This document shows, in pieces, positions 35,930 to 53,133 of a DNA stretch of 64,000 bases (its first letter is position 1; every line of letters starts with the position of its first letter). Position numbers and translations under genes: made by a program. The notes under the pieces were generated by a model. It was not told the origin of the DNA. It did not search any database and saw only the letters and a list, made by a program, of their open reading frames with translations. Where the stretch lies: positions 172,310 through 236,309 of IMG/VR virus record IMGVR_UViG_3300032322_002561; one strand, written 5' to 3'.

Positions 35930-36373
35930 ATGAAAACAACAATAATAGGCGCCCTGGCGATGGTGTTTGTCAACGGGAGCTATGCTGCAGAACTGGTACA
36001 TCAGTTCAATTCACCTTCCTTTTCGGGTCAGGGATATTCAAGTCATGTCTTGACCATTGAGCAACTGGAGGCCAGCCGTAGAAAAACCATAGCCGACGCA
36101 CAACGAGCCGCACAAGAAAAAGCCGAACGCGATGCCAAAAATACCAATCTGGCCAAGTTCTTGGTCAATGTTGAGTCACGAATTTACGCTCAACTCAGCA
36201 AGCAGTTGGCTGATGCTATGTTTGCTGACAACAATGCCACTTCGGGTACCATGGATTTCCAAGGAACCAACATTTCGTGGGTCAAAACCGGCACAGATGT
36301 CACACTAACCATTATAGAGTCCAACGGTAATAGAACAGACATCACAGTGCCTCTTGCGAGTTTTGCGTTCTAA
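35930..36373 (+). CDS. csgF: CsgF-like curli assembly protein
   Basis: Signal peptide, then ELVHQFNSPSFSG (cf. CsgF FQF.NP.FGG); F..N.ESRI..QL; G.M; T.I.VP. Confidence 0.75.
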   Translation: MKTTIIGALAMVFVNGSYAAELVHQFNSPSFSGQGYSSHVLTIEQLEASRRKTIADAQRAAQEKAERDAKNTNLAKFLVNVESRIYAQLSKQLADAMFADNNATSGTMDFQGTNISWVKTGTDVTLTIIESNGNRTDITVPLASFAF

Positions 36374-37410
36374 TGCGTAAACTGCTCTTGATCCTTTTTG
36401 TTGCGGTGTTGCCGGGTTGTGCCTACATACACATGGAAGTGGCACAGGAAGAACCTGTGAAGGTTACACCCAAAAAAAATCTCATGGATCAATTGCCGGT
36501 GCTGGATGGTCCGCCCATGACCGTGGCCGTGTACGGATTCAGAGATCTTACCGGACAGAACAAACCCAATGATCGTTTGGCCCTGTTTTCAAAGGCAGTA
36601 ACACAAGGTGCTGAAGTATTTCTCATCAAGAGCCTACAAGATTCAAAGAACTGGTTCCGTGTGGTGGAACGTGTGGGTCTGGACAACTTGATCAAAGAAC
36701 GTCAGTTAATAAGAAATCAGCGTGAAGTCTACGAAGGCAAAGAAGCCAAGCCCTTAAAGCCCTTGACCGTGGCCGGTATCTTGCTGGAAGGCGGTATCAT
36801 AGGCTATGACAGCAATATCAGGTCAGGCGGTAATGGTGCCAGGTTCCTGGGCATAGGTGGCAGCCAGCAGTATCGTGTGGACGAAGTCACAGTGAGTCTT
36901 AGATTGATCAGTATCAGTAGTGGCGAAGTTCTGATGACCAATGCTGTGACCAAGACCATATATTCAACAGCACACAATGTGGGCGTGTTGAGATTTGTGG
37001 ATGCTGGAACCAAGGCCCTGGAGTTGGAAAATGGACAGGCGTTGAACGAGCCCACTACCTATGCTGTGCGTGTGGCCATTGAACAAGCCGTGTATGAACT
37101 GATTGTGGAAGGTCAGAAGAAAGGCTTATGGAGTTACCGGCGTCCTGAGGAGAAACGCAATGATGTCAATCCTGCTACAACAGGCACAGAAACAAAGCCA
37201 TTGCCACCAAAAGCCACTGTGGTCACAATAATGAAACTGCGTGAAGCATCATATATCTATCGTGATCCAGACGAACGTAGCCAGCGTACCTGGATGTTGA
37301 AGGAAAACACAGAATTGACCGTGACACCAGGCCAGGATGGCTGGGTTGCGGTACAAGATTCAGCCGGTCGCAAGGGCTGGGTCAAAAGTGACAGGTTAAT
37401 TCAGCCATGA
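36373..37410 (+). CDS. csgG: CsgG curli secretion channel lipoprotein with C-terminal SH3-like domain
   Basis: Lipobox LPGC; VAVY.F.D.TGQ.KP, S.AVTQG, WF.VVER.GL.NL.KERQ.IR, EGGI.GYDSN, QYR.D.VTV.LR; tail W..V....G..GWV. Confidence 0.92.
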   Translation: MRKLLLILFVAVLPGCAYIHMEVAQEEPVKVTPKKNLMDQLPVLDGPPMTVAVYGFRDLTGQNKPNDRLALFSKAVTQGAEVFLIKSLQDSKNWFRVVERVGLDNLIKERQLIRNQREVYEGKEAKPLKPLTVAGILLEGGIIGYDSNIRSGGNGARFLGIGGSQQYRVDEVTVSLRLISISSGEVLMTNAVTKTIYSTAHNVGVLRFVDAGTKALELENGQALNEPTTYAVRVAIEQAVYELIVEGQKKGLWSYRRPEEKRNDVNPATTGTETKPLPPKATVVTIMKLREASYIYRDPDERSQRTWMLKENTELTVTPGQDGWVAVQDSAGRKGWVKSDRLIQP

Positions 37411-37516
37411 ACGCCTGTAAATATACAAGTGCGATAATCGCACTTGATAATAATAAGGTCGCAAAGACCAAGGAGCTGATTGGACAATAACAAAAACAAA
37501 TCCAATCTGAAAACAA

Positions 37517-38143
37517 ATGGAAAAGAGATGGACAGGCACTGGCGGACTGCCGAGAAAATTATCCGCAATTCTGGTGGTCGCTGCAATGTGGTCACTGGGT
37601 GCTCAGGCCAATGAAGTTTACATTGAACAGGTAGGCAGTGGTTCAACCATAAACATCACGCAACAGGGCACAGACAACCGCATTGGTGACAGCACCACCG
37701 CGGCCTATATAGGATCAGGATCCAACACAGTGACCATAGATCAGATTGGTTCAACCAACGCTCTGGACATGGTGGTCAATGGCGCTGGTACAGATGTCAC
37801 GGTCAGCACTACCGGTGACAACAACACGCAAACCATTAACTGTGGGACCACACAGTCGGCGGGCTGTAGCGGCAGCGTGATCAGTGCTACCATTGCTGGT
37901 GACAGCAACATCACCACGCAAAATCTTGGTGCTGGAGCCAATCATACCAGTAACATTTCCATCACTGGAGACACCAACACTGTTACCCATACCAGCACTG
38001 CCACAGGTACTACTTTGGCAGATATTACTGTGTCGGGCAATACCAACACAGTGGCAGTCACACAATCGGGAATGTTGAACAAGAGTGTCACAGTTACCAG
38101 CACTGGCAACAGTAATACTATTAATATTACTCAGTCAGACTAG
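37517..38143 (+). CDS. Curlin-like secreted repeat protein
   Basis: Signal peptide plus N/T/G/S-rich repeats of type N.V.I.Q.G..N. Confidence 0.75.
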   Translation: MEKRWTGTGGLPRKLSAILVVAAMWSLGAQANEVYIEQVGSGSTINITQQGTDNRIGDSTTAAYIGSGSNTVTIDQIGSTNALDMVVNGAGTDVTVSTTGDNNTQTINCGTTQSAGCSGSVISATIAGDSNITTQNLGAGANHTSNISITGDTNTVTHTSTATGTTLADITVSGNTNTVAVTQSGMLNKSVTVTSTGNSNTINITQSD

Positions 38144-39164
38144 TTGGGCTTCAGTGGGCCGCGTGGTTGAACAGACCGGACCCACTGAAATAGTGCGCAA
38201 CAAAAAGAGTCTGAGCAGTAGTGTGAATGCACCTGTGGAGATGTTGGACACTATTGTTACTGCCCGTGCCAAGGCCAAAGTGGAGTTTGTGGACAAGACC
38301 ACGGTCAACATTACTGAGCAGAGCAAGATACTCATAGATGACTTTGTGTATGACCCCCGGGCCGGATCGGGCAAGTTGGCCATGAAGATGGTACAAGGCA
38401 CTGCCAGATATGCGTCGGGTCAGATAGCCAAGAACTCACCACAGAATGTAAACATAACCACACCCACTGCCGCTGTGGCCGTGCGTGGCACAGACTTCTC
38501 AATGACCGTAGATGAACTAGGCCGTAGTCTTATCATGTTGTTGCCCAGTTGCGATGCCAAGTCTTGTGTAACAGGATCAATCAGTGTGAGCAATGACGGT
38601 GGATCTGTGATCTTGGACGTGGCCTATCAGGTCACTGTGGTCACAAGTTTATCAACACCTCCTTCTGCGCCCACGGTGATACAGATTGACCCCAGCAACA
38701 TCAACAACCTGCTGATCGTGGCACCACCATCGGCGGTTCGTGAGGCCCTACAACCCGTGCAACAGACAGCGTTGGATATTAATTTTCTAAACAAGGACCT
38801 GCTGAAGTATGACGAGCTGAATGTGAATTATCTGGAAAAATTCCGGCAGTTGGATGTGAACTTTTTGGACATTGATTTCCTGGTCAATTTGCTGGATCTC
38901 AGCAATCAACAACTCAGTGCCAGCCTGGATGCCATGAGTCGTGAAGCCAGCTTGTTGCCGGCCTATGATCCCAATTCGGGACTGAGATATTTTTTTAACG
39001 ATGATGAAAGCAAGGTCACTGTGCGACTAAACACCGGGCACATGGCCGAAGTCACTGTGGGAGTAGAGCACGATGCTGTAGTAACCGTAAATCAAGCAGG
39101 TTGGGCAGTCACACAACAGATCAACCGTGGTGGGACCAGCATAATTAATATTGTACAGAAATAA
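38085..39164 (+). CDS. FecR-domain exported protein
   Basis: Signal peptide; D.I.T......F.D.T.V...EQS...ID.FVY, G..RY.SG, I.TPTA...VRGTDF. Confidence 0.88.
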   Translation: MSQLPALATVILLILLSQTSWASVGRVVEQTGPTEIVRNKKSLSSSVNAPVEMLDTIVTARAKAKVEFVDKTTVNITEQSKILIDDFVYDPRAGSGKLAMKMVQGTARYASGQIAKNSPQNVNITTPTAAVAVRGTDFSMTVDELGRSLIMLLPSCDAKSCVTGSISVSNDGGSVILDVAYQVTVVTSLSTPPSAPTVIQIDPSNINNLLIVAPPSAVREALQPVQQTALDINFLNKDLLKYDELNVNYLEKFRQLDVNFLDIDFLVNLLDLSNQQLSASLDAMSREASLLPAYDPNSGLRYFFNDDESKVTVRLNTGHMAEVTVGVEHDAVVTVNQAGWAVTQQINRGGTSIINIVQK

Positions 39165-40187: not shown

Positions 40188-40188
40188 C

Positions 40189-40616: not shown

Positions 40617-42632
40617 CTATTTAGATGTTGCCTTATAGGTTCCCATCCAGTCACTTGGCTTACCTGCCGCAAGTCGTTCATCCATGGCCCCATAATATGC
40701 CTCCAGTTCTGGGCAGGCTTGTTTGCATCCTGGAATCAAGGCCTGTGCTTTTTTCCATTCGCCTGCGTAATACAAGCTGATAAAATCTTTATGCAAATCT
40801 GTTTCTGTTGCCAATGTATATATGCGTACACCTTCGTTCTTGCCTTTGACAGCTATACAGTCTAGTTCCGTAACCGAGTAGGTATCTCGGACAAGCTCAG
40901 CAGTACGCGATCCCAATACAATGCGAACGCCATAAGGCTTTGACTGACCTTCGAGTCGGCTTGCCAGATTAACGCTGTCACCAAGGCAGGTGTAATCAAA
41001 ACGCTGACTGCTGCCCATATTACCAACGACAACGGTACCAGTGTTGATACCAAGGCCCATGCCAAAAGGCGGAACGCCTTCTGCACTGATTTCACGATTG
41101 AATTCATCCAAACTCTCCATCATTTGTAAAGCAGTACGCACAGCATTTCGAGCATGATCTGGATCATCCAAGGGTGCGTTCCAAAATGCCATCTGTGCAT
41201 CGCCAATATATTTGTCCAAGGTACCTGCATTTTCAAGTATCTTGGCAGTCATGGCTGTCATATAACGATTCATAATCTTTGTGAGTCCTTGCACGTCGGC
41301 ACCATAGTGTTCGCTGATGGTGGTAAATCCACGCACATCTGTGAACATGATGCTGAGTTCTCTGCTTTCACCGCCCAAGGTCAGTAGCTCGGGATTCTTT
41401 TGTAGACGTTCAACCATGGCTGGACTCAAGTATGTGCCAAACTGTTTCTTTATTTGTTGTTTAGCAAGATATTCAGATACAAAACGTACTCCGTAACTGT
41501 GAAGAAGCACAAGCACAAGGCCAGCAACAACCAAAGTGCCGTCCGTGAGCCAAGCATGACTCGAGTACAGAGCATGAGGAAGCCATAAACAAACACCAAG
41601 AACAACAACACTACCAGCAATACCAACATAGGTCCATCTCCCTAAAAATATCAGTGCTACACTTAGCAACACCAATGTTAAAATCTCTGCACCGTCGGCC
41701 CAGTCAGGTCTGGTGATGGCTGGACGTATTTTGTTGGCCATCACTGTAGAAATAACTGCGGCCTGCAAGTCCTGTGGCAACATTTCACCCAGACTGGTGG
41801 CCACTGGATTGGCCAAGCCCGCAGCACTGACACCTACAATCACTATCTCACCATCAAAGTCCTTTGGTAGATTCATCAAACTATGACGTTCTGGCGTTAG
41901 ACTCCAGTCAATCCAGATTCTACTGAGACTGTCTGTGGTTATCGGACCAAACTGTGGAATGCGTATTTTTTCCACACCAGATTCGTTGACTTTGACTTGT
42001 ATGGTTGAGTCGCCTGCGGCCACACGCATGACTTCTACGGCTAGACTGGGATATAATTGTCCGTTGTGGGCCACAACCATGGGCATGCGTCTGACCACAC
42101 CATCTATTTCAGGAAAAGTGTTGACTATGCCTACTCCAGCGGCGGCCTGTTCCACTGCAGGGATATTGGCGATGATACCACCGTAGTTCACAAAAGCATC
42201 TTGTCCATAGGGACCTATCTGCGCTGATCCTGGAGCTCGAGGTTGGTTGCGAGTCTGTGTGCTGCCTATGCTGGGCAACACTACTGGATGGCGTTTTAAG
42301 GTTTGGACGTAAGTTTGATCTCGGCCAAAACGATCGCTATCTGGAGTGAGCACGTTAAAAACAACAAGCCCAGCATTACGGCTGTAAAGGTCCTCAATGA
42401 TGGCAGCATATCTATCACGGCTAAAAGGAAATTGTCCATAACGTTCCAAAGCTTTCTCATCTATGTTTACCACATGCACTCCGGTGACTTCTGCTGGCTT
42501 GCTGGTCACAAGAGTATCAAAATAACGTAATCTTACACTTTCTACAAAGGCAGGATCTGCTATGCGTATACCCACAATCACAGCCAGGGTAAACAAGGCT
42601 GTCCAGGGGCTGGTTAGAATTTTTCTTAGCAT
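40617..42632 (-). CDS. CHASE2-domain class III adenylate cyclase
   Basis: TM, CHASE2 (V.IDE..L..YGQ.P..R; DG.VRR.P; Y.SL..E), 3 TM, cyclase FTDVRGFT, DKYIGDA.MAFW, GINTG...VGNMG, YT.LGD.VNLASRLEG, VKGK. Confidence 0.95.
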   Translation of the reverse strand: MLRKILTSPWTALFTLAVIVGIRIADPAFVESVRLRYFDTLVTSKPAEVTGVHVVNIDEKALERYGQFPFSRDRYAAIIEDLYSRNAGLVVFNVLTPDSDRFGRDQTYVQTLKRHPVVLPSIGSTQTRNQPRAPGSAQIGPYGQDAFVNYGGIIANIPAVEQAAAGVGIVNTFPEIDGVVRRMPMVVAHNGQLYPSLAVEVMRVAAGDSTIQVKVNESGVEKIRIPQFGPITTDSLSRIWIDWSLTPERHSLMNLPKDFDGEIVIVGVSAAGLANPVATSLGEMLPQDLQAAVISTVMANKIRPAITRPDWADGAEILTLVLLSVALIFLGRWTYVGIAGSVVVLGVCLWLPHALYSSHAWLTDGTLVVAGLVLVLLHSYGVRFVSEYLAKQQIKKQFGTYLSPAMVERLQKNPELLTLGGESRELSIMFTDVRGFTTISEHYGADVQGLTKIMNRYMTAMTAKILENAGTLDKYIGDAQMAFWNAPLDDPDHARNAVRTALQMMESLDEFNREISAEGVPPFGMGLGINTGTVVVGNMGSSQRFDYTCLGDSVNLASRLEGQSKPYGVRIVLGSRTAELVRDTYSVTELDCIAVKGKNEGVRIYTLATETDLHKDFISLYYAGEWKKAQALIPGCKQACPELEAYYGAMDERLAAGKPSDWMGTYKATSK

Positions 42633-42659
42633 AGTGTATTTAATGTAAATATCAGCACT

Positions 42660-43010
42660 ATGTATTGGGGATATCATTTACTGTTAGATTGCAGCGGCTG
42701 TAAAAACATAGACAGCCGAGACAATATCTACCGTTTTGTCAAAGATTTGGTAGCTCGTATAGACATGACTGCACATGGCGAACCCATTATTGAATACTTG
42801 TTACCGGGTGATCCCAAACAGGGCTACAGTTTGATGCAGTTAATTACCACTTCAAACATTGCTGGACACTTTATGGAACTGGATGGCACCGCTTACTTTG
42901 ATATATTCAGTTGCAAAGAATTTGATATAGAAACAGCCAAACAAGTGGTGCACGATTATTTTGCACCCGAACGTATGCGTGTGAATTTCTTAACACGTCA
43001 TGCCGATTGA
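42660..43010 (+). CDS. speD: S-adenosylmethionine decarboxylase proenzyme-like
   Basis: G.HL.LD, GYS...LI.TS.I..H, Y.D.FSC. Confidence 0.8.
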   Translation: MYWGYHLLLDCSGCKNIDSRDNIYRFVKDLVARIDMTAHGEPIIEYLLPGDPKQGYSLMQLITTSNIAGHFMELDGTAYFDIFSCKEFDIETAKQVVHDYFAPERMRVNFLTRHAD

Positions 43011-43740
43011 GTTTCCTGTCAAGGTTCCTTACACCACAGCACCCAACATGGTGCGCAACACAGGCGAAGTTTTTAATCGTCGACCCAATAAGCGCATCCT
43101 AGAACTCAAACGCCAAGAACTGATCCGGCATAACAAAGATCTGTACGCCCAAACTGACCTGGCAGCCAATTTACGTCTGGTAGGACATGCTTTAGACTTT
43201 TGCGGCCTGCCCAACTATTATGGCCTACAACAGTTGGCCATGAGCATCGAAGAAGACATTGCTATCATGCACAAGGGTAGGTTAGAAGCTATTTGTTTTT
43301 GTTTTCCTAGTAGCTGGATACCTCGAGAACGCATAGGTCAGACCTTGGCAGACATACATGCACCAGTGGCCGACGGTGACAAGTTAAGACAAATGAGCCA
43401 ACGCATAGCCGAGACCATGGCTGATCCAGCACAAGGCAGTTTCCGCAGACATGTATGGACCATTGCCAACAGCGGCGAGCTCAGTCAACATCCGGCCAGC
43501 AAGAGCAATCTGGTGCCCACCAGCATCGAAGATCTTTGGTTTAGACTGGAAACACAGACCACGCATCCTGTGGGCGATGGTGTTACTAGTTTGTTTTTTG
43601 TGCGAGTGGAAACAGAACCATTGTCAATGATTTGGAATGACTCGCACCGACGCCAGATCTTGATAGACAGTGTCAACAGCATGTCCGATGCTGTGTTGAC
43701 CTACAAAAACTTACACGAGATCAAAAAACTGCTGATCTAG
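43000..43740 (+). CDS. DUF3445 (heme-dependent oxidative N-demethylase alpha-like) protein
   Basis: EDI, CFPS.W...ER.G..L..IH.PV, R..W, R.E.QT, LF. Confidence 0.8.
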   Translation: MPIEFPVKVPYTTAPNMVRNTGEVFNRRPNKRILELKRQELIRHNKDLYAQTDLAANLRLVGHALDFCGLPNYYGLQQLAMSIEEDIAIMHKGRLEAICFCFPSSWIPRERIGQTLADIHAPVADGDKLRQMSQRIAETMADPAQGSFRRHVWTIANSGELSQHPASKSNLVPTSIEDLWFRLETQTTHPVGDGVTSLFFVRVETEPLSMIWNDSHRRQILIDSVNSMSDAVLTYKNLHEIKKLLI

Positions 43741-44027
43741 TTCATTAATAATCTGATAAGTCCAACTGTGTCAATGGTGATCATCAGCAGGTAGTTGGCC
43801 AGCATTCCTGAACTACGACGAGTCCATGCGGCCCAGGCCAGCAGGCTACAAGTTACAATAAACGCAGGATAGATCCAGTAAAAGGGCGGGTTAGGCAAGG
43901 TCACTGCCATGGTTACAGCCACCACCACACTCACAATCCAGGCTACAAACTCGGCGGCAAAGCGTAAAGGATAACTGCGATAATCTTCCTGTATCCAACT
44001 CCAGGTTCGTTGTATAGTATCTATCAT
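43737..44027 (-). CDS. Small membrane protein
   Basis: Three hydrophobic helices; ATGA coupling to uvsE. Confidence 0.75.
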   Translation of the reverse strand: MIDTIQRTWSWIQEDYRSYPLRFAAEFVAWIVSVVVAVTMAVTLPNPPFYWIYPAFIVTCSLLAWAAWTRRSSGMLANYLLMITIDTVGLIRLLMN

Positions 44028-45055
44028 ACCAATCCTAACTCCACTGCACGATTGTAAACCTGCTCACTGGCCAGGTTCTTGCCTTTGCTTTCGCACTGTA
44101 TGTCAAACTGGTCCCAGAAGCCCAACACCCAGTCAGTGGCGGCCTGATTCCAATAAAAATCTGAGTGTGCTCGTAATTTTTGTTTTTTGAATCCAGACTC
44201 TAGCAGACTTGCATGATCTGGTTTATGGTGAACGGCATGGTCAACAAGTAGATCTTCACGGCTAACGCTGTAGTGCATAGCAGGACGCACACCGCGCCAA
44301 CTGTCAACAACACGTTTGACCCTATCGTCATCAGGCTGGATGTATTCGCCCGTTTTAATCCAGTGATGATGAACATCAAGAACAGTAGGAACAATATCAG
44401 CCAGCTCCAGGCAATGATCCAGCCCATGTGTTATTTCCTCGTTTTCAAAGGTGATACAGTTGCGTGCTTCTGTACTTAGTCGAGACCAGGCACGACGAGC
44501 ACCAGCGGCACCGGCCTTGCCGGAGATATGCACATTGATCTTCATGTCTTGAAACTGACGACCAAAGCCCATCCAACGAGCCATGTCGGCATGATACTCG
44601 AACTCTTCTATACTGCGATCTACGATTTCTTGGCTTTCACTACCCAACACACAAAACTGCCCTGGATGAAAGCTGACTCGCACATCTAGTCTACGGGCGG
44701 TTTCGCCAATGGGTGCAAAAATACGTTCACAGTGTGCTTGGATCTCAGGGCGTTGCCACCAGGCCTTCCAATCCTTTTCTGTGTAGCCCTGTAGCATTTC
44801 TGATCCTAAGCGCACCATCCTACGATTGGCCGGCAATGAAGCCACACGCTCAATCAGTCGGACAGCAGCCGCAGTATTGTGGTTCATGATGTCCCACTGG
44901 CGTTGTTCGGCTTCCTCAGGATGCTCACGCAACCAACGCATGGTCGTGCTACGGCCATTTAGGTCACGGTCTTTGGCATTGACTTTCATGCCGCCGCATT
45001 CGCTGGGATCATTGAGCCATTTGCAACAGAAACCAATGCGTTTGAGTGTAGTCAT
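44024..45055 (-). CDS. uvsE: UV damage endonuclease UvsE/UVDE
   Basis: RIGF.C, R.SFHPGQF.VL, N.H, EN.E, LD.HHHW, HYS, AHSD, E.K.K. Confidence 0.92.
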   Translation of the reverse strand: MTTLKRIGFCCKWLNDPSECGGMKVNAKDRDLNGRSTTMRWLREHPEEAEQRQWDIMNHNTAAAVRLIERVASLPANRRMVRLGSEMLQGYTEKDWKAWWQRPEIQAHCERIFAPIGETARRLDVRVSFHPGQFCVLGSESQEIVDRSIEEFEYHADMARWMGFGRQFQDMKINVHISGKAGAAGARRAWSRLSTEARNCITFENEEITHGLDHCLELADIVPTVLDVHHHWIKTGEYIQPDDDRVKRVVDSWRGVRPAMHYSVSREDLLVDHAVHHKPDHASLLESGFKKQKLRAHSDFYWNQAATDWVLGFWDQFDIQCESKGKNLASEQVYNRAVELGLV

Positions 45056-45060
45056 AAGCT

Positions 45061-45090
45061 ATTATAGCATGACTAATGATTTTTTGTCAA
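45061..45090 (-). promoter_or_regulatory. sigma70-type promoter
   Basis: TTGACA-N18-TATAAT. Confidence 0.65.
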
Positions 45091-46004
45091 TGACGCCGCT
45101 GAGTATCCAAAGTTACACAATGAAATCCACCTCCCAAGGTTCTGGAGTGGCTTAATGCTAGTGGTATGGTATCAAAACCTTTGGATTTCAATAGTTCTAT
45201 CAAATGCGGCTGTGCAGAATCCAATATCACGGTTTCTGGATCCACAGCCAGCATGTTCATGGCTATCCATTTTGATGCATAAGGATATTGGTAGAAACTT
45301 TGCGGCACAATCATTTCATCTGTCACCCAAATCTTTTCCCAGTAATCAAATGCTCGCGGACAGTTGTCTTTGTTGACTCGGCTGGCATTTAGCAAGACTA
45401 GGCCTTCTCGCAAGGGCACAATGGTTGAATCAATGTGTACACCTGCGTAGAAATTGCACGATTCGATCTTGACTTGTGGAAACTTTTTTGCCAACCATTC
45501 ATAAGCGGCTCTGTTGCCTGAGGCTGATTCCAAAAACAACCAAGTATCGCCTAATCTGCAAACGTTGGCTGCATCCATGATCATTCCTGAATCTCTGGGC
45601 ATGGTCAGAATATTACTGGCTTCGGCCAACAATCTTGTGTAGTTTGTGATTTCTTGGTTGCGACACGGATACATCATGTTGACATCAACCACAGTGTCTT
45701 TCCAGATCAAGAGACGATCTCTGGGGCAATAATTATACATGCCTTCTGTTTCTACAAAATTCATGGGTCGGGGCCTGTAAACAGTGACTCCCAGACGCAA
45801 CAAGGTTTCACTCAGCGTGTCAAGTTCTCTATTGGCCTGATCGACAATGTGTTGCGGTACCGGGCCTGAAGGCACCGGTGTTTCCTTCCAAGTGGTTTTT
45901 TTGCCTTCTTCAGCAAATACTGGATCCGATGTGGGCCAGTTGGCGTGGGTAGCACTGCCCACAACTATTTTTTCTAACGGATCCCACTCATTGATTGAAT
46001 ACAT
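45087..46004 (-). CDS. Amidinotransferase (glycine/inosamine-phosphate amidinotransferase family)
   Basis: NEWDPL..IVVG, CPRD, DAA, HIDST, MN.L, LGGGFHC.TLD. Confidence 0.92.
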   Translation of the reverse strand: MYSINEWDPLEKIVVGSATHANWPTSDPVFAEEGKKTTWKETPVPSGPVPQHIVDQANRELDTLSETLLRLGVTVYRPRPMNFVETEGMYNYCPRDRLLIWKDTVVDVNMMYPCRNQEITNYTRLLAEASNILTMPRDSGMIMDAANVCRLGDTWLFLESASGNRAAYEWLAKKFPQVKIESCNFYAGVHIDSTIVPLREGLVLLNASRVNKDNCPRAFDYWEKIWVTDEMIVPQSFYQYPYASKWIAMNMLAVDPETVILDSAQPHLIELLKSKGFDTIPLALSHSRTLGGGFHCVTLDTQRRH

Positions 46005-46519
46005 CACACATGTCCTGTAACTTGCAAAGTATATCTGGGCACTATGCCGCAATTGGCTGCCATATGCGGAGTGTCATAGGGCCATTCTACAACATCTCCG
46101 GCTCCCCAATTTACAAAAGGCGAATCCATGTATTCAGCATAGTGTCCGGGTTGCCAGTCTTGTAAAAAAATCACAGCACGTCGTATGTTGTGTTCTTGTC
46201 CGTGCAAATTGAACAACTCAATATATTTGATGTAAAGATCACTGTGTGTGGGTAATATGGTACCGGGCATCATTCTATAGTAACTGGTACCTATGTCTTT
46301 CCATCCAAGATTAGCAAATATGCTAATGAATTGTTGATTCCATGATGGTTGTGAACTGCGCATGTCGCACATGTCACCTGTGAATCGATTTGGGAATCCC
46401 AACGACAACCAACGTTGCAAGTTGGGGTTGTCGTTGAATGGTTCGTTTATGTATTCAAGATGAACAAATTCATCATCCCAAAATTTCTTAAGCCGGTACT
46501 TTGTGATTGATCTGTCCAT
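46004..46519 (-). CDS. 2OG-Fe(II) oxygenase / cupin-like protein
   Basis: PG..LP.H.D...H...N....RYTLQ.TG. Confidence 0.75.
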   Translation of the reverse strand: MDRSITKYRLKKFWDDEFVHLEYINEPFNDNPNLQRWLSLGFPNRFTGDMCDMRSSQPSWNQQFISIFANLGWKDIGTSYYRMMPGTILPTHSDLYIKYIELFNLHGQEHNIRRAVIFLQDWQPGHYAEYMDSPFVNWGAGDVVEWPYDTPHMAANCGIVPRYTLQVTGHV

Positions 46520-47777
46520 ATTTGACGTTGGTTTCGAAGTTGGTATTTCTAGTGTTACCATAATGAATCACCGTGATACCACTGACGTCGACCATTTTCC
46601 TCCAGGGATCCACAACCACACTGCCAGCTTGGATTTCGCAGTACGGTAAAGTATCCTGTTGTTCACCGGTGTATTCGTAGGTGATTTTTCTGTTGTGTGC
46701 CCAAAGATACACAGCTGGGCCATCAACAGATTCTACTACATCTGTAGAATCGTCGGCCAAGGGATCCACATAAGTCACAGTCATGCCGGCTTCCTTGACA
46801 TAGTGGCCAACCAAGGTTGAATAACTGCCAATGCAATAGGGCACATCGGGCTTGTAGGCCTTGCCGTGTATGACTATGGGTAGATTGTGTTGTCGAGCCT
46901 TATCTACCAGGAACAAGGCCAAATTTTTGGCCTGTACTTCTCGTGCCAGCATGATGGTATCAAACAAGTCGTAACCAACATCATATTCTTCGGCCAGCCA
47001 ACGCAGCGCAATGTTGTCTCTGGGATGACAAGCGCCAGCATCGCCCATGCCTGCTGTCATGTACTTGGGTCCCATGATACGCATGGTGCTGCGAGCCAAG
47101 GCATTTGTTACTACGTCTACGTTGATGTTGCCAATCCGCATGGCAAAATCTTGAATCATGTTGGCCAGGCCGACCTTGGCACTAATAAATGTGTTGTAGA
47201 AAATCTTAATGGCTTCGCATTCATCCCAGGTTCCGATTTCGTATCTGGGGTTATTTTGCATGATGGTTTTGTAAATGTCAATCAATTCACCAGCCAAGGT
47301 GTTGGGATTTCCGTCTTCGGTGCCAATCATGACCATTTCTGGATTGACCATGTCCCACTTTACACTTCCCATGGCGATCAGATAAGGGTTGTATAAAAAT
47401 TGATGTTTTTTATCTAAAAGCGTAATAAAATGACGTCGTGTTGTGCCCGGTAACACTGTGCTGATCAGCACAACTTTTTTTGAGGATTTGGCATGTTGAT
47501 TTATCTTGCTTATGGCATCTTTGACAGCATCATGTCCAAAATCTTTGGGCTTCATGTGTGAACTAGGAACGCTGCCATCATAGCCTTCTTCGTGCGGAGT
47601 AGGCACAGCAATAAAAATCCACTCACTTTGATTGACCACTTCGTCAATGTCACAAACTTTGACGCTGTCACTTTGGCGTGGGTAAATATCATATCCCCTA
47701 ACGGTGTGTTTTTCAGCAAAGACTTCAGCACAATCTAGACCCAGTTTACCTAGACCAATAAATCCTATATTTTTCAT
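46488..47777 (-). CDS. UDP-glucose/GDP-mannose dehydrogenase family
   Basis: GFIGLGKLG, IAVPTP, STVLPGT, K.FYNTF...K, G.G..G.CHPRD, G.AYKP. Confidence 0.92.
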   Translation of the reverse strand: MKNIGFIGLGKLGLDCAEVFAEKHTVRGYDIYPRQSDSVKVCDIDEVVNQSEWIFIAVPTPHEEGYDGSVPSSHMKPKDFGHDAVKDAISKINQHAKSSKKVVLISTVLPGTTRRHFITLLDKKHQFLYNPYLIAMGSVKWDMVNPEMVMIGTEDGNPNTLAGELIDIYKTIMQNNPRYEIGTWDECEAIKIFYNTFISAKVGLANMIQDFAMRIGNINVDVVTNALARSTMRIMGPKYMTAGMGDAGACHPRDNIALRWLAEEYDVGYDLFDTIMLAREVQAKNLALFLVDKARQHNLPIVIHGKAYKPDVPYCIGSYSTLVGHYVKEAGMTVTYVDPLADDSTDVVESVDGPAVYLWAHNRKITYEYTGEQQDTLPYCEIQAGSVVVDPWRKMVDVSGITVIHYGNTRNTNFETNVKYGQINHKVPA

Positions 47778-47778
47778 T

Positions 47779-48948
47779 ATGAGTGTTCCTTTAGATAGAT
47801 TATACAACTACTTGCAAGACATTGTCAAGATTGATATTGTAATTTATCGCTGGTATCCACACGGATCAAAAAAACCCATCTACATACGTCCCTTGAAACA
47901 CTATGACACAATGAGCTTGCAACAAGGACCCTTTGTGCTCATGCATGATCAAGAACCCCTGGGCATGGATCAATACAGTGATCAAGATCTTATAGAATTT
48001 AAAAATTGGATAGCAGAACGTGCACCAGAAGTACATTCAGTTGGTGTCAACACTTTCATGGAAACCTTGAGAAACAACAATCTGGGAGGATTCTTGCCCG
48101 TGGATAATAACCAACCTGTGGTTGTAGTTCACAGTGAGCAGAACAGTAATGAAGTAAAAATTCTTGAAAGCACCGGTCATTTTCCAGTGTATTATTGGAG
48201 CCATGCTCTACTTGCACGAGATTGGTATCGTTATGCTGAACATGATCCCAAATTATCTTGCAAAGAATTACAACAAACCTTTCTCATCTACAGTCGTGCT
48301 TGGTCAGGCACACGCGAATATAGATTAAAGTTTTCTGAACTATTGGTTGATAATGACATGGTAGATCATTGTCGCATGAGTTTTAGCCCAACTGATTCGG
48401 ATCGGCCTTACACAAATCATGTGTATAAAAATCCCATTTTCGCCATCAACACCCAACTAGAAAATTATTTTTCAATCAATCACACAGAGTCAGATGCCAG
48501 TGCTGACTATTGCACCCAAGATTATCAAGCCACCAAGATGGAGGTGGTGTTGGAAACATTGTTTGATGATCATCGCTGGCATCTCACAGAAAAAATTCTA
48601 CGGCCCATTGCGTGTGGACATCCTTTTATTTTGGTTTCAACTCCGGGCAGTCTTAGATACTTGCGTAGTTATGGATTTAAGACTTTTGATGATGTCATTG
48701 ACGAATCATATGACAACATAGTTGATCCTTTGGCGCGACTAAAAGCCGTAGTTGAAGTCATGAAACATTTGCTGTCAGCTGATGCACATACATGGAGCAT
48801 GCTCAAGACCACAGCCGAATACAACAAATCCCTGTTTTTCTCTGCAGAATTTCAGCGTAGAATAGTTGACGAATTCTCAGCAAACTTTGATCAGGCACTT
48901 TTTAATATGACACCATCCCAGTCTGGGTCAGGCGGATTATCAACATAG
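47779..48948 (+). CDS. Putative glycosyltransferase (GT10-like TEK motif)
   Basis: V.ET......LTEK..RPI..G.PF......G.L.YLR..GFKTF...IDESYD. Confidence 0.65.
   Translation: MSVPLDRLYNYLQDIVKIDIVIYRWYPHGSKKPIYIRPLKHYDTMSLQQGPFVLMHDQEPLGMDQYSDQDLIEFKNWIAERAPEVHSVGVNTFMETLRNNNLGGFLPVDNNQPVVVVHSEQNSNEVKILESTGHFPVYYWSHALLARDWYRYAEHDPKLSCKELQQTFLIYSRAWSGTREYRLKFSELLVDNDMVDHCRMSFSPTDSDRPYTNHVYKNPIFAINTQLENYFSINHTESDASADYCTQDYQATKMEVVLETLFDDHRWHLTEKILRPIACGHPFILVSTPGSLRYLRSYGFKTFDDVIDESYDNIVDPLARLKAVVEVMKHLLSADAHTWSMLKTTAEYNKSLFFSAEFQRRIVDEFSANFDQALFNMTPSQSGSGGLST
47799..47828 (-). promoter_or_regulatory. sigma70-type promoter inside the divergent glycosyltransferase ORF
   Basis: TTGACA-N18-TATAAT plus AAGGA SD before ATG 47777. 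Confidence 0.6.
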
Positions 48949-49247
48949 CGATTGACCCGCTGTAGTAGATTTTCATAAAAGCTGTCTAACTCACCACCCC
49001 AACGTCCTGTCAGCGACTTTATGGCACTTTGACAGTATTCCCAATTGCGTTGACGATATTCAACCAAAAGTTGATTGTGTGCTTGTCGGTAGTCATCTAA
49101 GGTGGGAAATTCATGCAAAGGTATATTTTCTACTACACAATAGGCTTTGACTACATCATCTGCTCCGGCAAATTTAAAATTGTCCAGTTCCAAAATCGTG
49201 TAATTGTCTGGCAAGTCTTTGATGTCATCTCCAAATATTATGTTCAT
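48891..49247 (-). CDS. Stand-alone homologue of the adenylate cyclase C-terminal region (non-catalytic)
   Basis: I.FG....L.D.Y...ELD.....G....V..Y ... H.....Y....W ... EL..FY....R ... P.DW.G aligns with the last ~100 aa of 40617..42632. Confidence 0.75.
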   Translation of the reverse strand: MNIIFGDDIKDLPDNYTILELDNFKFAGADDVVKAYCVVENIPLHEFPTLDDYRQAHNQLLVEYRQRNWEYCQSAIKSLTGRWGGELDSFYENLLQRVNRYVDNPPDPDWDGVILKSA

Positions 49248-49271
49248 ATGTTTTCCTTTTAAATATGTATC

Positions 49272-50063
49272 ATGAAACTGGCGTTTGACTTAATTTCTGA
49301 TCTACATCTTGAAACATGGCCCACAGCCTTTGATTGGCAAGGTCTTGCAACCAGTCCTTTTTGCATTGTAGCCGGAGACGTATCACGTGATCGCAACATC
49401 CTAATAGAAACCCTGCGGCATCTTGGCACCTGTTATCAGGCTGTGTTTTACATAGATGGCAATGATGAGCACCGGCATTATTATGATGATCTAGCCTCCA
49501 GCTACAAGGATCTTGAAAAGCAGTTGCAGAATATTCCACATGTTACCTATCTACAAGGCAATGTTGTGGTAATTGATGGTGTAGCAATTTTGGGTACCAA
49601 TGGCTGGTGGGGATTTGATTTTGACAAAAACATTGATCCCACACAGTGCGCTTTATGGTATCAAGAAAAAGTTGCCTGTGCCGGACACACTGTGCGCAGT
49701 ATTGGCAACATGGCCACAACAGATGCTATATATCTTACCAACAGTGTGACCAAACTACAGGCTCACCTGGATGTGCAACAAATAATTGTGGTCACTCACA
49801 CAGTGCCTAGCCCCGAATTGGTGTCACATGACATTGATCTAGTAGGCGACTATCGGTTCAATTGTATAGGTAACGAAGGAATGTTGCAGGCCTTGCAGGC
49901 AGACTTTGGCAACAAAATCCATACTTGGTGTTTTGGACACTATCATGGCAGTGTGGATCAAGTCAAACACGGTGTAAGATTTGTCAACAACTGTCGGGGT
50001 CGACACGACACAAAATGGTGCAAACATGTATTCCACCCCTTGCGTATTGAAGTAGAAATTTAG
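49272..50063 (+). CDS. Calcineurin-like metallophosphoesterase
   Basis: SDLH.E, VAGD, GNDEH, THTVP, FGHYH, NN.RG. Confidence 0.88.
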   Translation: MKLAFDLISDLHLETWPTAFDWQGLATSPFCIVAGDVSRDRNILIETLRHLGTCYQAVFYIDGNDEHRHYYDDLASSYKDLEKQLQNIPHVTYLQGNVVVIDGVAILGTNGWWGFDFDKNIDPTQCALWYQEKVACAGHTVRSIGNMATTDAIYLTNSVTKLQAHLDVQQIIVVTHTVPSPELVSHDIDLVGDYRFNCIGNEGMLQALQADFGNKIHTWCFGHYHGSVDQVKHGVRFVNNCRGRHDTKWCKHVFHPLRIEVEI

Positions 50064-50371
50064 AGTACGTCTTCGGGTTCCAGTTTGACCTGCAACGGAT
50101 AACTTTGAGCTCGCGCACTCACAGTGACTTCGATGCCTTTTTGTTCAGCTATTTCATACGGCAACACAGCCACAATGGCACTGCCTTCTTGATGTATATC
50201 AATGGTGATACGTTCGGCACTTTCAGCAGTGTAATCAAAATGTTCTATCAAACTTTCTATCACAAATTCCATGCTGGTTTGATTGTCATTGAGATATATT
50301 ACACGAAACAGGGGCGGTTCTTTGATTTTTTCTACAGGTTTAATTCTTGTACGTGGTTCTGCATTTGCCAT
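50060..50371 (-). CDS. clpS: Clp protease adaptor ClpS
   Basis: P.LF.V..LND..T.MEFV..L...F, IH..G.A.V, EIAE.K, YPL...E. Confidence 0.93.
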   Translation of the reverse strand: MANAEPRTRIKPVEKIKEPPLFRVIYLNDNQTSMEFVIESLIEHFDYTAESAERITIDIHQEGSAIVAVLPYEIAEQKGIEVTVSARAQSYPLQVKLEPEDVL

Positions 50372-50386
50372 GAGTTTTCCTTGAAT

Positions 50387-50411
50387 CAGTAGCGGGACAG
50401 TCCCGCTACTG
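50387..50411. terminator. Stem-loop between hsp20 and clpS
   Basis: CAGTAGCGGGACAGTCCCGCTACTG perfect inverted repeat. Confidence 0.55.
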
Positions 50412-50425
50412 TATTTACTATTTTA

Positions 50426-50863
50426 TTAGTCTTGATAGGTAATTGCAATACTCTTTGGCTTGGCACTGTCAGGAATCTTGCGTTCTAGATACACGGTCAA
50501 GATACCATCCTTTTGTCCAGCACTGTTTACTTCCACATATTCTCCTAGACTAAAGGTACGAATGAACTTTCTTGCACTGATGCCCTGATGTCTATAAATG
50601 TAGTCAGGATTCACAGGTTCATTTTTTTCACCTGTAATGATCAGTTCGCCCTCTTTTACCGTGATATCAATTTCGCCTTGACCAAAGCCGGCCACGGCTA
50701 GTTGTATCTCGTAAAGATTTTCCATGGTTTCTACAATATTGTAGGGTGGATAGTTTACATTTGATGCATGGTCAAGTTGGTTTACAATGCGATCAAACAA
50801 TCTATCTACACCAATGGCATTGCGATAAAATGGTGTCAAATCATAACTTGTAATCTTAGTCAT
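50426..50863 (-). CDS. Small heat-shock protein Hsp20 (IbpA-like)
   Basis: IG.DR.F, NYPPYNI, LAVAGF, H.GIS.R.F.R.F.L, DGIL.V.L. Confidence 0.95.
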   Translation of the reverse strand: MTKITSYDLTPFYRNAIGVDRLFDRIVNQLDHASNVNYPPYNIVETMENLYEIQLAVAGFGQGEIDITVKEGELIITGEKNEPVNPDYIYRHQGISARKFIRTFSLGEYVEVNSAGQKDGILTVYLERKIPDSAKPKSIAITYQD

Positions 50864-50918
50864 TTGTTTTCTCCTTATTAAGCAAGTTGACTATTGGCGG
50901 CCCCAAACGGGCACCGCC
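50864..50918 (-). promoter_or_regulatory. ROSE-like RNA thermometer leader (copy 2, hsp20)
   Basis: GGCGG-UG-CCC/GGG-G-CCGCC stem, then CUUGCUUAAUAAGGAG. Confidence 0.75.
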
Positions 50919-50930
50919 TACTGAGTTTCC

Positions 50931-52811
50931 TCAGTCTTTCTTTTCGGTAAAGTCTGCATCGACCACAGTGTCTTCTGGCTTGGATTCTGCTGTGGTTTTC
51001 TTAGACTTTGCTTCAAAGATGGGTTGGCTGACTGCCATGACTTCGTTTATCTTACCGGTCATGGCTTCACGATCTGCGCCTTTGGCTACTTCTTCTAGTT
51101 CGTTCAAGGCTCGTTCAATAGATTCAATTTGGTCAGCGGTGAGTTCAGTTCGTACTTCGGCTAGATCTTGCCGAATCATGTGCAGTGTGCTGTCAGCATT
51201 GTTGCGTGCCTGAATTAGATCGCGTTGACGTCGATCCTCTTCGGCATTGGCTTCTGCGTCCTTGATCATGCGTTGAATTTCTTCATCAGTGAGTCCACTA
51301 TTGGCCTTGATGGTGATTTTGTTTTCTTTGCCAGTGGCTTTGTCCTTGGCTGAAACATGCATGATACCATTGGCGTCGATGTCTAAGGTCACTTCAATTT
51401 GTGGTGTGCCACGACGTGCTGGTGCTATACCTTCAAGATTGAATTCACCCAAGAGCTTGTTGTGCTGACACAATTCACGCTCGCCTTGAAATACCTTGAT
51501 GGTCACAGCAGGCTGATTGTCTTCTGCGGTACTAAAAATTTGGCTGTGTTTGGTTGGAATAGTTGTATTTTTTTGAATCAGTTTGGCCATTACGCCGCCC
51601 ATGGTTTCAATCCCAAGACTGAGTGGTGTAACATCCAACAATAATACGTCTTTTCTGTCACCAGCCAGCACTGCACCTTGAATTGCAGCACCCACTGCCA
51701 CGGCTTCGTCAGGATTTACATCCTTGCGTGGTGTTTTACCAAACAGTTGCTCAACTGCCTCTTGTACCTTTGGCATGCGTGTTTGTCCACCGACAAGGAT
51801 GACTTCGTCAATATCGCTAGCGCCAACACCGGCATCTTTCATGGCTTGACGACAAGGAGCCAAACTGCGTTGAATTAGTTCTTCAACTAAGCTTTCTAAT
51901 TTTGCACGTGTGAGTTTGACATTTAAGTGCTTGGGTCCTGAGGCATCGGCAGTGATGTATGGTAGGTTTACATCAGTCTGGTTGCTGTTAGAAAGTTCAA
52001 TCTTGGCTTTTTCTGCGGCATCTTTTAGACGTTGTAAGGCAAGCATGTCTTTTTTGAGATCAACACCGCTTTCTTTCTTGAATTCATCTACCAAATAATC
52101 CATAATGCGTTGGTCAAAGTCTTCACCGCCTAGGAACGTGTCACCATTTGTTGACAATACTTCAATTTGTTTTTCACCGTCAATGTTGGCAATTTCAATG
52201 ATGCTGACGTCAAATGTACCACCCCCCAGGTCATACACAGCTACCTTGCGATCGGTTTTATCTTGTTTGTCAACACCATAGGCCAAGGCAGCTGCCGTGG
52301 GTTCGTTGATGATGCGTAGCACTTCCAAGCCTGCGATGCGTCCGGCATCCTTGGTGGCCTGACGCTGGCTGTCATTGAAGTAGGCCGGTACTGTGATCAC
52401 TGCTTGTGTGACTTCTTGGCCTAGATAGTCTTCGGCAGTTTTTTTCATTTTGCGAAGAACTTCGGCACTGATTTGTGGAGGTGCCAATTCTTGATTTTGA
52501 GCTCGGATCCAGGCATCACCGTTTGAAGCCTTGATGATTTCATAAGGCATGAGGTCTATGTCTTTTTGCACAGCTTCCTCTTCAAACTTGCGCCCGATCA
52601 GTCGCTTGGCAGCGTAGATTGTGTTTTTTGGATTGGTTACTGCTTGTCGTTTGGCACTGGCACCAACCATGATTTCATCGTCGGTATAGGCGATGATAGA
52701 GGGTGTGGTTCTAGCACCTTCGCTGTTTTCTATTACTCGGGGATTTCCGTTTTCAATAATGGCCACACACGAATTTGTGGTGCCCAGGTCAATACCTATG
52801 ACTTTGCTCAT
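50931..52811 (-). CDS. dnaK: Chaperone DnaK (Hsp70)
   Basis: [37 protein letters not shown]; full length. Confidence 0.98.
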
Positions 52812-52870
52812 TTGCGTTCTCCTTATGTTAAGCAAGATTTTTTTGTAGCCCGACCATCGGCACTACAAAA
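52812..52870 (-). promoter_or_regulatory. ROSE-like RNA thermometer leader (copy 3, dnaK)
   Basis: UUUUGUAG-UG-CCGA/UCGG-G-CUACAAAA stem, then CUUGCUUAACAUAAGGAG. Confidence 0.7.
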
Positions 52871-52905: not shown

Positions 52906-53133
52906 CTAATATAATTTTTTGGGCAATTGCTGGCTGGCCAATTGTTTTTGCCAACGTTTAGAAGCAGCATTGCGTTTGAGTTTGCGTCTAGTAGTGGGTT
53001 TGATATAGCACTCACGATCTCGCAAGTCATTGAGGATTCCTGAAGCCTGTATCTTCTTTTTAAATTTGCGCAGGGCTTTTTCGACATTGCCGTCGTTTAC
53101 CAGCACACTGCGTCCGCGAAAATAATTACTCAT
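52906..53133 (-). CDS. rpsU: Ribosomal protein bS21
   Basis: V....VEKALRKFKKK....G...DLR.RE.Y.KPT..RK. Confidence 0.93.
   Translation of the reverse strand: MSNYFRGRSVLVNDGNVEKALRKFKKKIQASGILNDLRDRECYIKPTTRRKLKRNAASKRWQKQLASQQLPKKLY

What the first reader, a model, noticed from the sequence alone, without database searches (positions are those of the whole stretch)
48891..50063. Stand-alone dead copy of the cyclase C-terminus, head-to-head with a metallophosphoesterase
Seen: the 118-aa protein NIIFGDDIKDLPDNYTILELDNFKFAGADDVVKAY...HNQLLVEYRQRNW...ELDSFY...PDPDWDG aligns by eye with the cyclase tail RIVLGSRTAELVRDTYSVTELDCIAVKGKNEGVRIY...HKDFISLYYAGEW...ELEAYY...PSDWMG. It lacks the metal-binding Asps, N..R and the KGK lysines. 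It is an intact ORF with an SD, divergent (24-bp gap) from a calcineurin-like phosphoesterase. Known: class III cyclases work as dimers; CpdA-type cAMP phosphodiesterases belong to this fold. Inference: a cyclase-mimic inhibitor/adaptor plus a cyclic-nucleotide eraser that completes the cAMP circuit, or acts against host cyclic-nucleotide immunity.
Basis: partly seen in the sequence, partly recalled or inferred. Interest (0 to 1): 0.75.

Follow-up and report, generated by a model that had tools for sequence, protein, structure and literature searches.

The report
Stand-alone phage copy of cyclase tail
A 118-residue protein of a huge freshwater phage is a real, strongly selected, free-standing copy of the non-catalytic C-terminal part of adenylate cyclases, and it founds a large virus-only family. 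The proposed cAMP circuit with the neighbouring phosphoesterase is not supported.

Summary
ORF 48891-49247(-), here called X118, is homologous end to end to the last ~100 residues of the window's CHASE2 adenylate cyclase (40617-42677(-)). A profile of cyclase tails finds every X118 copy among 4598 ORFs, and the next unrelated hit has E 0.9. hhalign gives E 1.4e-7. A confident AF2 model matches almost only the extreme C-termini of class III cyclases.

X118 is not decaying. dN/dS is about 0.1-0.2, many residues are invariant, and 795 cluster representatives match, nearly all viral and with no Pfam family.

The proposed circuit fails on several counts:
- Six of 8 near-complete phage genomes with an X118-family gene have no class III cyclase.
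- The cyclase belongs to an accessory curli (T8SS)-FecR cassette already described in pelagiphages.
- A second X118 subfamily (about 100-106 aa) has no phosphoesterase neighbour and often sits directly upstream of that cassette.
- The phosphoesterase is catalytically intact, but its fold is nearest to YotB and PptH rather than CpdA, and its motif III is GNDEH.

My best reading is a non-catalytic mimic of the cyclase C-terminal module that acts on class III cyclase signalling. That mechanism is inferred, not shown. Co-folding gave no answer.

The parts
48891..49247 (-). X118: a 118-aa stand-alone homologue of the cyclase C-terminal module. The model has strand, short helix, two-strand hairpin, three TPR-like helices and a terminal strand.
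49254..49271 (.). An 18-nt stretch of the 24-bp divergent intergenic region. Read on the X118 strand it is GATACATATTTAAAAGGA, which includes the X118 Shine-Dalgarno sequence and abuts the phosphoesterase ATG. It is nearly invariant in 60 distinct related loci.
   Evidence: unique in the window; no sigma-70 consensus match
49272..50063 (+). Metallophosphoesterase, 263 aa, with all metal-ligand motifs invariant (DxH, GD, GNDEH, H176, GHYH). Substrate unknown.
40632..40928 (-). The segment of the CHASE2 adenylate cyclase gene (residues 584-682) that is homologous to X118.
40617..42677 (-). CHASE2 plus class III cyclase, 686 aa, with catalytic residues intact.
35930..39164 (+). CsgF, CsgG, curlin-repeat and FecR genes. 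This is the accessory curli/T8SS cassette to which the cyclase belongs.
47779..48948 (+). Unknown 389-aa ORF (start uncertain), convergent with X118 and overlapping its 3' end by 58 bp.
50060..50863 (-). ClpS and Hsp20 genes. They are the conserved upstream anchor of the block that carries X118 in both phage lineages.

Best explanation
Shown:
- X118 is a free-standing, selected paralogue of the non-catalytic C-terminal module of class III (CHASE2-type) cyclases. That module consists of the last strands of the catalytic domain plus a TPR-like helical tail.
- The AF2 model is a confident, compact single domain and contains none of the catalytic residues.
- It is a fixed gene of two lineages of huge aquatic tailed phages. 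It sits just after Hsp20-ClpS, at the edge of a variable region that often carries the curli-FecR-cyclase cassette.

Inferred:
- It most likely arose from the 3' end of such a phage cyclase gene.
- It most likely works by mimicry. It would present the conserved surface of the cyclase tail (H57, Y91 and R97 are invariant in both X118 subfamilies and in the cyclases) to whatever that tail normally contacts. That could be the catalytic core of a class III cyclase or a factor that reads the tail. The effect would be to tune cAMP output of the host's cyclases and, where present, of the phage's own.
- It does not need the phage cyclase or the neighbouring phosphoesterase.

I put the identity and origin at about 0.95 and the mimicry mechanism at about 0.3.
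For: - Homology: (77 of 80 short-subfamily members hit by the tail profile).
- Fold: AF2 pLDDT 88.9, pTM 0.81. In AFDB clusters, nearly all of hits 2-30 align to the C-terminal ~115 aa of cyclase-domain proteins with CHASE2, response-regulator or GAF sensors, TM by query 0.67-0.79. The ESM Atlas search by shape gives the same result, TM 0.76-0.84.
- Selection: median dN/dS 0.17, and 0.08-0.13 for the closer pairs. There are 17 invariant columns.
- Family size and range: 795 representatives, with the best 150 all 80-151 aa. There are 182 and 195 IMG/VR loci against 1 in 185,579 prokaryote species genomes.
- Shared invariant residues with the cyclases.
- Positional link to the cassette in a second, independent arrangement: CsgF is the next gene in 50 of 80 loci, with a modal spacer of 67 bp.
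Against: - No direct evidence of binding. The co-fold of the cyclase catalytic-domain dimer, the phosphoesterase and X118 gave 'no answer'.
- Six of 8 near-complete genomes have no phage cyclase, so the target would have to be a host protein, and the host is unknown.
- Nearness to the cassette may only reflect a shared hot spot for accessory genes.
- The shared H/Y/R residues could be purely structural.
- No expression data could be found.
Confidence: 0.4

Rival explanations
1. X118 inhibits or adapts the phage's own cyclase, and the divergent phosphoesterase erases cAMP or immune cyclic nucleotides. The three genes form one module.
For: The homology is real. X118 and the phosphoesterase are head to head in 81 of 81 loci, mostly with a 24-bp gap. 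The phosphoesterase active site is intact. Some relatives in this fold, such as MPPED2 and CpdA, hydrolyse cNMPs.
Against: Three of 5 near-complete lineage-1 genomes and 3 of 3 near-complete lineage-2 genomes lack any PF00211 domain. The cyclase co-occurs with CsgG, not with X118. The phosphoesterase is missing from all 80 short-subfamily loci and from their genomes. CpdA and Rv0805 are only distant fold neighbours, and the GNH[ED] motif is not met. All 81 loci belong to one syntenic lineage, so the adjacency amounts to one observation.
Confidence: 0.1
2. X118 is a regulatory or specificity subunit of the neighbouring phosphoesterase, unrelated to cAMP.
For: The divergent pairing is invariant, the 18-nt intergenic stretch is nearly invariant, and synonymous sites are conserved in the first ~10 phosphoesterase codons.
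Against: The pairing is confined to one lineage. In the sister subfamily the upstream neighbours are Rv2179c-like, YfbR-like or IMPDH-like genes and there is no phosphoesterase. Relatives of the phosphoesterase occur in phage G, Atu_ph07 and Phosso, where tblastn finds no X118. The co-fold gave no answer.
Confidence: 0.1
3. X118 is a relic of a cyclase 3' end that was taken over for a job with no link to cyclases, for example within the Hsp20/ClpS/ClpX proteostasis block. Its nearness to the cassette only marks an insertion hot spot.
For: X118 is always within a few genes of Hsp20-ClpS in both lineages. It persists without cyclase, cassette or phosphoesterase. It has its own 12-residue insertion and invariant residues that the cyclases lack.
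Against: No positive evidence for any particular other function. The polar residues shared with cyclase tails (H57, Y91, R97, D22) are kept over ~25% identity.
Confidence: 0.3
4. X118 is a chance ORF or a decaying pseudogene fragment.
For: It is short and has no Pfam, PHROG or NCBIfam hit.
Against: dN/dS is about 0.1-0.2. Hundreds of full-length homologues exist with invariant residues. The fold prediction is confident.
Confidence: 0.01

Closest known systems
C-terminal segment of class III (CHASE2-type) adenylate/guanylate cyclases (Pfam PF00211 end plus the un-named helical tail)
   Same: Homologous over its whole length. Same predicted fold. Shared invariant residues L21, D22, H57, Y64, Y91, R97, W110 and G112.
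   Different: Stand-alone and 118 aa long. It lacks the metal Asps, the substrate Lys, N..R and KGK. It has a 12-residue insertion after the hairpin. It is found almost only in viruses.
Viral curli (T8SS)-FecR-adenylate cyclase module of pelagiphages and Melnitz (PMC9599517)
   Same: The window's cyclase and its CsgF, CsgG, curlin and FecR neighbours are this module. Short X118 genes sit directly upstream of it.
   Different: X118 is not described as part of that module. It is absent from Melnitz and HTVC008M. It persists where the module is absent.
Class III cyclic-nucleotide phosphodiesterases (CpdA, Rv0805)
   Same: Same metallophosphoesterase superfamily and dimetal ligand set as the neighbouring gene.
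   Different: Only distant fold neighbours (TM 0.41-0.55). YotB and PptH are closer (0.65-0.71). Motif III is GNDEH, not GNH[ED].
SPbeta prophage YotB and M. tuberculosis PptH (phosphopantetheinyl hydrolase, 6UNC)
   Same: Best structural matches of the phosphoesterase. The best real PDB sequence hit is 6UNC, which is weak at E 0.11.
   Different: About 16-17% identity. PptH has the canonical GNHE motif. The substrate cannot be transferred.

Membership tests
Class III nucleotidyl cyclase catalytic domain (PF00211) | Complete catalytic core with two metal-binding Asp, a substrate-specifying Lys, the N..R transition-state pair and the KGK phosphate lysine | tested here: not met
   X118 aligns only to cyclase residues 584-682, after N570/R574. 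KGK is replaced by AGADD. No Pfam hit.
Cyclase C-terminal module (last strands plus TPR-like tail) | Significant sequence-profile match over the whole module | tested here: met
   Tail HMM E 1.8e-10 for P0001. All 81 copies found, with the next unrelated hit at E 0.9. hhalign E 1.4e-7.
Cyclase C-terminal module (last strands plus TPR-like tail) | Same three-dimensional arrangement | tested here: met
   AFDB and ESM Atlas matches are to the C-termini of cyclases, TM by query 0.67-0.84. No solved structure covers the module.
Metallophosphoesterase superfamily (the neighbour, 49272-50063) | DxH, GD, GNx[DE], H and GHxH metal ligands, and the calcineurin-like fold | tested here: met
   D10, H12, D36, N64, H176 and H223 are invariant and H225 nearly so. 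phrog_1649 E 2e-24. 86 PDB fold matches at E<=0.001, the listed ones all metallophosphoesterase-fold enzymes.
Class III cNMP phosphodiesterase (CpdA/Rv0805) | GNH[E/D] motif III (the signature is recalled from the literature) and closest similarity to CpdA or Rv0805 | tested here: not met
   Motif III is GNDEH. Rv0805 TM 0.41-0.46 and CpdA 0.49-0.55, against PptH and YotB at 0.65-0.71.
Class III cNMP phosphodiesterase (CpdA/Rv0805) | Hydrolysis of 3',5'-cAMP or cGMP | not testable with these tools
   Needs an enzyme assay.
Known anti-defence families in PADLOC, and PHROG functional classes | Profile match | tested here: not met
   No PADLOC hit for X118 or the phosphoesterase. No PHROG hit for X118.

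The most novel reading that the evidence does not exclude
X118 is the first example of a phage-encoded 'cyclase-tail mimic'. This would be a small protein, derived from a cyclase's own C-terminal module, that docks on host (and viral) class III cyclases or on their tail-binding partner to take over cAMP signalling during infection. It would also reveal that this widespread, unstudied tail is a regulatory interface.
Probability: 0.25. Interest if true: 0.75.

Novelty: new variant of a known kind. Interest (0 to 1): 0.5.

Why it matters
If the mimicry reading is right, it would give a handle on two unknowns at once. The first is what the conserved C-terminal tail does. It is found on many bacterial cyclases with CHASE2, response-regulator, GAF/PAS or HAMP sensors, and I found no solved structure of it. 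The second is how huge aquatic phages interfere with host cAMP signalling.

Even without a mechanism, this is a large virus-restricted family with no Pfam, PHROG or NCBIfam match and a clear evolutionary origin. It is a clean case of a domain fragment becoming an independent gene.

The work also corrects the tempting but unsupported picture of a cyclase-inhibitor-eraser circuit.

Tried and rejected
- Co-folding of the cyclase catalytic-domain dimer, the phosphoesterase and X118 returned 'no answer', score 0.00. It is not used as evidence either way.
- No RNA sequencing run could be listed for the region, so there are no expression or transcript-end data.
- The sequence-profile and Foldseek searches of the PDB with X118 gave nothing significant. 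VIA-align gave only middling TPR-like helix matches, Z<=6.3.
- No sigma-70-type promoter is found in or around the 24-bp gap. The 14-mer core of the conserved stretch is unique in the window. The only upstream motif enriched genome-wide is TATAATA, and it is not present here.
- I tested whether the small ORFs upstream of CsgF in phage Melnitz are X118 relatives. They are not. In podovirus pelagiphages the corresponding genes are annotated as 'histidine kinase'.
- I tested whether the Haliscomenobacter MAG that carries one X118 contig has cyclases with this tail. The six best of its 12 cyclase-domain genes do not. The contig carries the phage block and is probably a mis-binned phage contig.
- The pseudogene and chance-ORF readings are rejected by dN/dS and conservation.
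- I did not attempt a rooted phylogeny of X118 against cyclase tails, because I had no bacterial tail sequences to use as an outgroup.
Full report
**Setting.** The window is bases 172310-236309 of a 236-kb IMG/VR virus record that CheckV rates 68% complete. It is a tailed phage. It has tail-fibre and virion PHROG hits and a DNA ligase, and GC is 46%. DNA runs that hold the region are metagenomes, one labelled lake water.

**Observation.** ORF 48891-49247(-) encodes 118 aa (P0001, here X118).
- An AAAGGA Shine-Dalgarno sequence lies 6 nt before its ATG.
- 24 bp separate it from the divergent ORF 49272-50063(+) (P0003).
It carries CHASE2 (E 2e-38) and Guanylate_cyc (E 3e-22) domains.

**Is the resemblance real?** Pairwise BLASTP is only modest (E 5e-4, residues 1-46 against 584-630), so I tested it with profiles.
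- A profile of 44 X118 homologues aligned all 121 related phage cyclases in register at their C-termini, at 6-27 bits.
- The reverse test is cleaner. An HMM of the last 105 residues of 123 phage cyclases, with no X118 sequence in it, was searched against all 4598 ORFs of 50 aa or more from 81 related loci. It found three cyclases and all 81 X118 ORFs at E<0.01 (best 3e-12). The next ORF had E 0.9.
- P0001 scores 39 bits (E 1.8e-10) over residues 3-113.
- hhalign of the X118 alignment against an alignment of the cyclase catalytic region gives probability 94% and E 1.4e-7. X118 residues 1-115 match cyclase residues 584-682.
- The profile also recognises the tail of the cyclase of the cultured phage Melnitz, at 30.7 bits.
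- The tail HMM hits 77 of 80 members of a second X118 subfamily.

**Structure agrees independently.**
- The AF2 model is confident: pLDDT 88.9, pTM 0.81. Its order is strand, short helix, two-strand hairpin, three helices, terminal strand.
- Against AFDB fold clusters, hit 1 is a 117-aa uncharacterised protein. Nearly all of hits 2-30 align to the C-terminal ~115 residues of cyclase-domain proteins, with N-terminal domains named as CHASE2, response regulator or GAF. TM by query is 0.67-0.79.
- The ESM Atlas search by shape gives the same picture for CHASE2, response-regulator, GAF/PAS, HAMP and dCache cyclases of Pseudomonadota, Spirochaetota and Verrucomicrobiota, with TM 0.76-0.84.
- No solved structure covers the module. 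The helices look TPR-like only at a middling Z.

So the module is a common but unstudied C-terminal part of cellular class III cyclases, and X118 is a free-standing copy of it.

**Catalytic residues.** X118 starts after the N..R helix, and AGADD replaces KGKNE. The metal Asps and the substrate Lys lie far upstream in the cyclase. X118 cannot be a cyclase.

**Not a dead gene.**
- More than 230 homologues of about 116-120 aa were found at 44-75% identity.
- In the library of 1.84 billion representatives, 795 match at E<=0.001. The best 150 are all 80-151 aa.
- Seventeen columns are invariant.
- dN/dS has a median of 0.17 over 149 pairs, and 0.08-0.13 for pairs with dS<0.7.
- There is no Pfam, PHROG, NCBIfam or PADLOC family for it.
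- The family is essentially viral. There are 182 confirmed IMG/VR loci against one contig in 185,579 prokaryote species genomes. That contig carries the same phage gene block.
- tblastn finds no match in 50,697 deposited phage genomes.
- ESM Atlas clusters of the family are 88-98% viral.

**Context in lineage 1, the window's lineage.** All 81 related loci share one gene order: o106, o484, ClpX, [DnaK], Hsp20, ClpS, phosphoesterase (opposite strand), X118, o414 (opposite strand), UGDH-like, o185, o321, UvdE, o96.
- The phosphoesterase and X118 are head to head in 81 of 81 loci, nearly always 24 bp apart.
- Because the whole block is syntenic, this adjacency is one inherited arrangement. It is not 81 independent associations.
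- Within the gap, 18 nt are at least 98% identical in 60 distinct sequences. Read on the X118 strand they are GATACATATTTAAAAGGA (window 49254-49271).
- Synonymous sites of the first ~10 phosphoesterase codons are also fixed, while third codon positions elsewhere vary.
- The phosphoesterase has no Shine-Dalgarno sequence.
- This looks like a shared regulatory element. Its type is unknown, with no sigma-70 match and no other copy in the window.

**The cyclase belongs elsewhere.** Next to the cyclase lie CsgF (35930-36373), CsgG (36373-37410), a curlin-repeat gene (37517-38143) and a FecR-domain gene (38085-39164).
- The same cassette flanks the homologous cyclase of Methylophilales phage Melnitz.
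- It has been described for pelagiphages as a viral T8SS/curli module with FecR and adenylate cyclase (PMC9599517).
- Among five lineage-1 genomes that are 92-100% complete, cyclase and CsgG are both present in two and both absent in three. All five carry X118 and the phosphoesterase.

**A second subfamily.** More distant X118 relatives are about 100-106 aa and about 37% identical, and they lack the last strand. They occur in 195 further IMG/VR loci, again in phages of up to 354 kb and again a few genes after Hsp20-ClpS.
- None of the 80 loci examined has the phosphoesterase. Their near-complete genomes lack its orthologue.
- Upstream neighbours include Rv2179c-like, YfbR-like and IMPDH-like genes.
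- In 50 of 80 loci the very next gene is CsgF, with a modal spacer of 67 bp.
- Of 44 loci with at least 2 kb of downstream sequence, 23 continue directly with CsgF-CsgG-curlin, most of them on to FecR, a second curlin gene and, in three loci, the cyclase. Two more have the cassette a few genes further on, and 19 have no cassette.
- Three near-complete genomes of this lineage (91-100%) have no class III cyclase domain.
- Overall, 6 of 8 near-complete genomes with an X118-family gene have no class III cyclase.

**The phosphoesterase.**
- All dimetal ligands are invariant in 30 orthologues: D10, H12, D36, N64, H176 and H223, with H225 nearly so. Motif III reads GNDEH.
- Family matches are phrog_1649 (E 2e-24) and, weakly, TIGR03729 and Metallophos_2.
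- The AF2 model has pLDDT 93.4.
- The nearest solved fold is PptH of M. tuberculosis (6UNC, TM 0.67-0.71), followed by MPPED2, Dbr1 and UshA. Rv0805 scores 0.41-0.46.
- In Swiss-Prot models, SPbeta YotB is nearest (0.67), then MPPED1/2 (0.54-0.56) and PptH (0.65). CpdA-type enzymes score 0.49-0.55.
- It is an active-looking enzyme of unknown substrate. Nothing singles out cyclic nucleotides, and nothing excludes them.
- Distant relatives occur in phages G, Atu_ph07 and Phosso, where tblastn finds no X118.

**Interpretation.** The following is shown:
- X118 is a selected, autonomous, non-catalytic copy of the cyclase C-terminal module.
- It is a fixed gene in two lineages of huge aquatic phages.
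- It does not depend on the phage cyclase or on the phosphoesterase.

The following is inferred:
- Origin from the 3' end of a cassette-type cyclase. Both occur in the same phage lineages, and the cassette, where present, lies next to X118 or a few kb from it.
- A mimicry mechanism. H57, Y91 and R97 are invariant in both X118 subfamilies and in the cyclases. D22, Y64, W110 and G112 are shared with lineage 1. This suggests a surface, or a buried polar network, that is kept for a reason.

A soluble copy of that module could compete for whatever the tail contacts. Because most genomes lack a phage cyclase, the usual target would be a host protein.

I rate this mechanism at about 0.3. The main rival, at about 0.3, is co-option for an unrelated role in the conserved Hsp20/ClpS block. 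Co-folding gave no answer and no RNA data could be found.

**Novelty and score.** Viral curli-FecR-cyclase modules and phage metallophosphoesterases are known (PMC9599517, PMC12287305). I found no family or description for a stand-alone cyclase-tail family. It is a new variant of a known kind: a domain fragment turned into a gene. Interest is 0.5. It is a solid and fairly surprising family with a testable hypothesis, but no demonstrated function, and the more exciting circuit is not supported.

Noticed in passing
window 35930-42677: CsgF, CsgG (with an SH3 domain), curlin-repeat and FecR genes lie next to the CHASE2 cyclase. This is the viral T8SS/curli-FecR-cyclase module known from pelagiphages and Melnitz, here in a huge freshwater phage. 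It is present or absent as a unit among related genomes.
   Followed up: yes
window 49254-49330: The 18 nt between X118 and the phosphoesterase are nearly invariant, and so are synonymous sites of the first ~10 phosphoesterase codons, in 60 distinct loci. The phosphoesterase has no Shine-Dalgarno sequence. This may be an overlapping divergent promoter or operator, or a leaderless start.
   Followed up: partly
window 50858-50920 (-): A ROSE_3-like RNA thermometer match (33.6 bits, E 4.8e-4, below the gathering score of 43) lies exactly in front of the phage Hsp20 gene. Seven related loci gave no match at gathering threshold.
   Followed up: partly
window 52906-53133 (-): A phage-encoded ribosomal protein S21 (Pfam E 6e-18) lies between DnaK and ClpX. 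An S21 gene also lies near the block in the distant locus L086.
   Followed up: no
window 50931-52835 (-): A DnaK/Hsp70 gene lies between Hsp20 and ClpX in only 6 of 81 lineage-1 loci. It is a variable insertion into an otherwise fixed gene order.
   Followed up: partly
window 48891-48948: X118 and the convergent unknown ORF o414 overlap by 58 bp at their 3' ends. In related loci the overlap varies from 4 to 97 bp.
   Followed up: partly
window 42660-47807: A run of metabolic genes lies between the cyclase and X118: a SAM-decarboxylase-like gene, a HODM alpha-subunit-like gene, UvdE, an ORF with a weak dimethylargininase (DDAH) match at its C-terminus, and a UDP-glucose dehydrogenase-like gene.
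   Followed up: no
whole genome G000: TATAATA is the only 7-mer strongly enriched within 45 nt upstream of ORF starts (17 of 265 ORFs, about 20-fold). It is a candidate phage promoter core and is absent from the X118-phosphoesterase gap.
   Followed up: partly
L002 (NZ_JBBAKG010000110.1, Haliscomenobacter MAG): The only prokaryote-genome hit for X118 is an 18.5-kb contig that carries the phage block. It is probably a phage contig binned into the MAG. The six best of the MAG's 12 cyclase-domain genes lack the tail module.
   Followed up: partly
L084 / G002:C1:135749-137578: One search reported a TAA inside the cyclase match of a 100%-complete relative. The six-frame reading nevertheless gives an open 683-aa frame with an intact tail, so the stop is probably an artefact at the match boundary.
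   Followed up: partly
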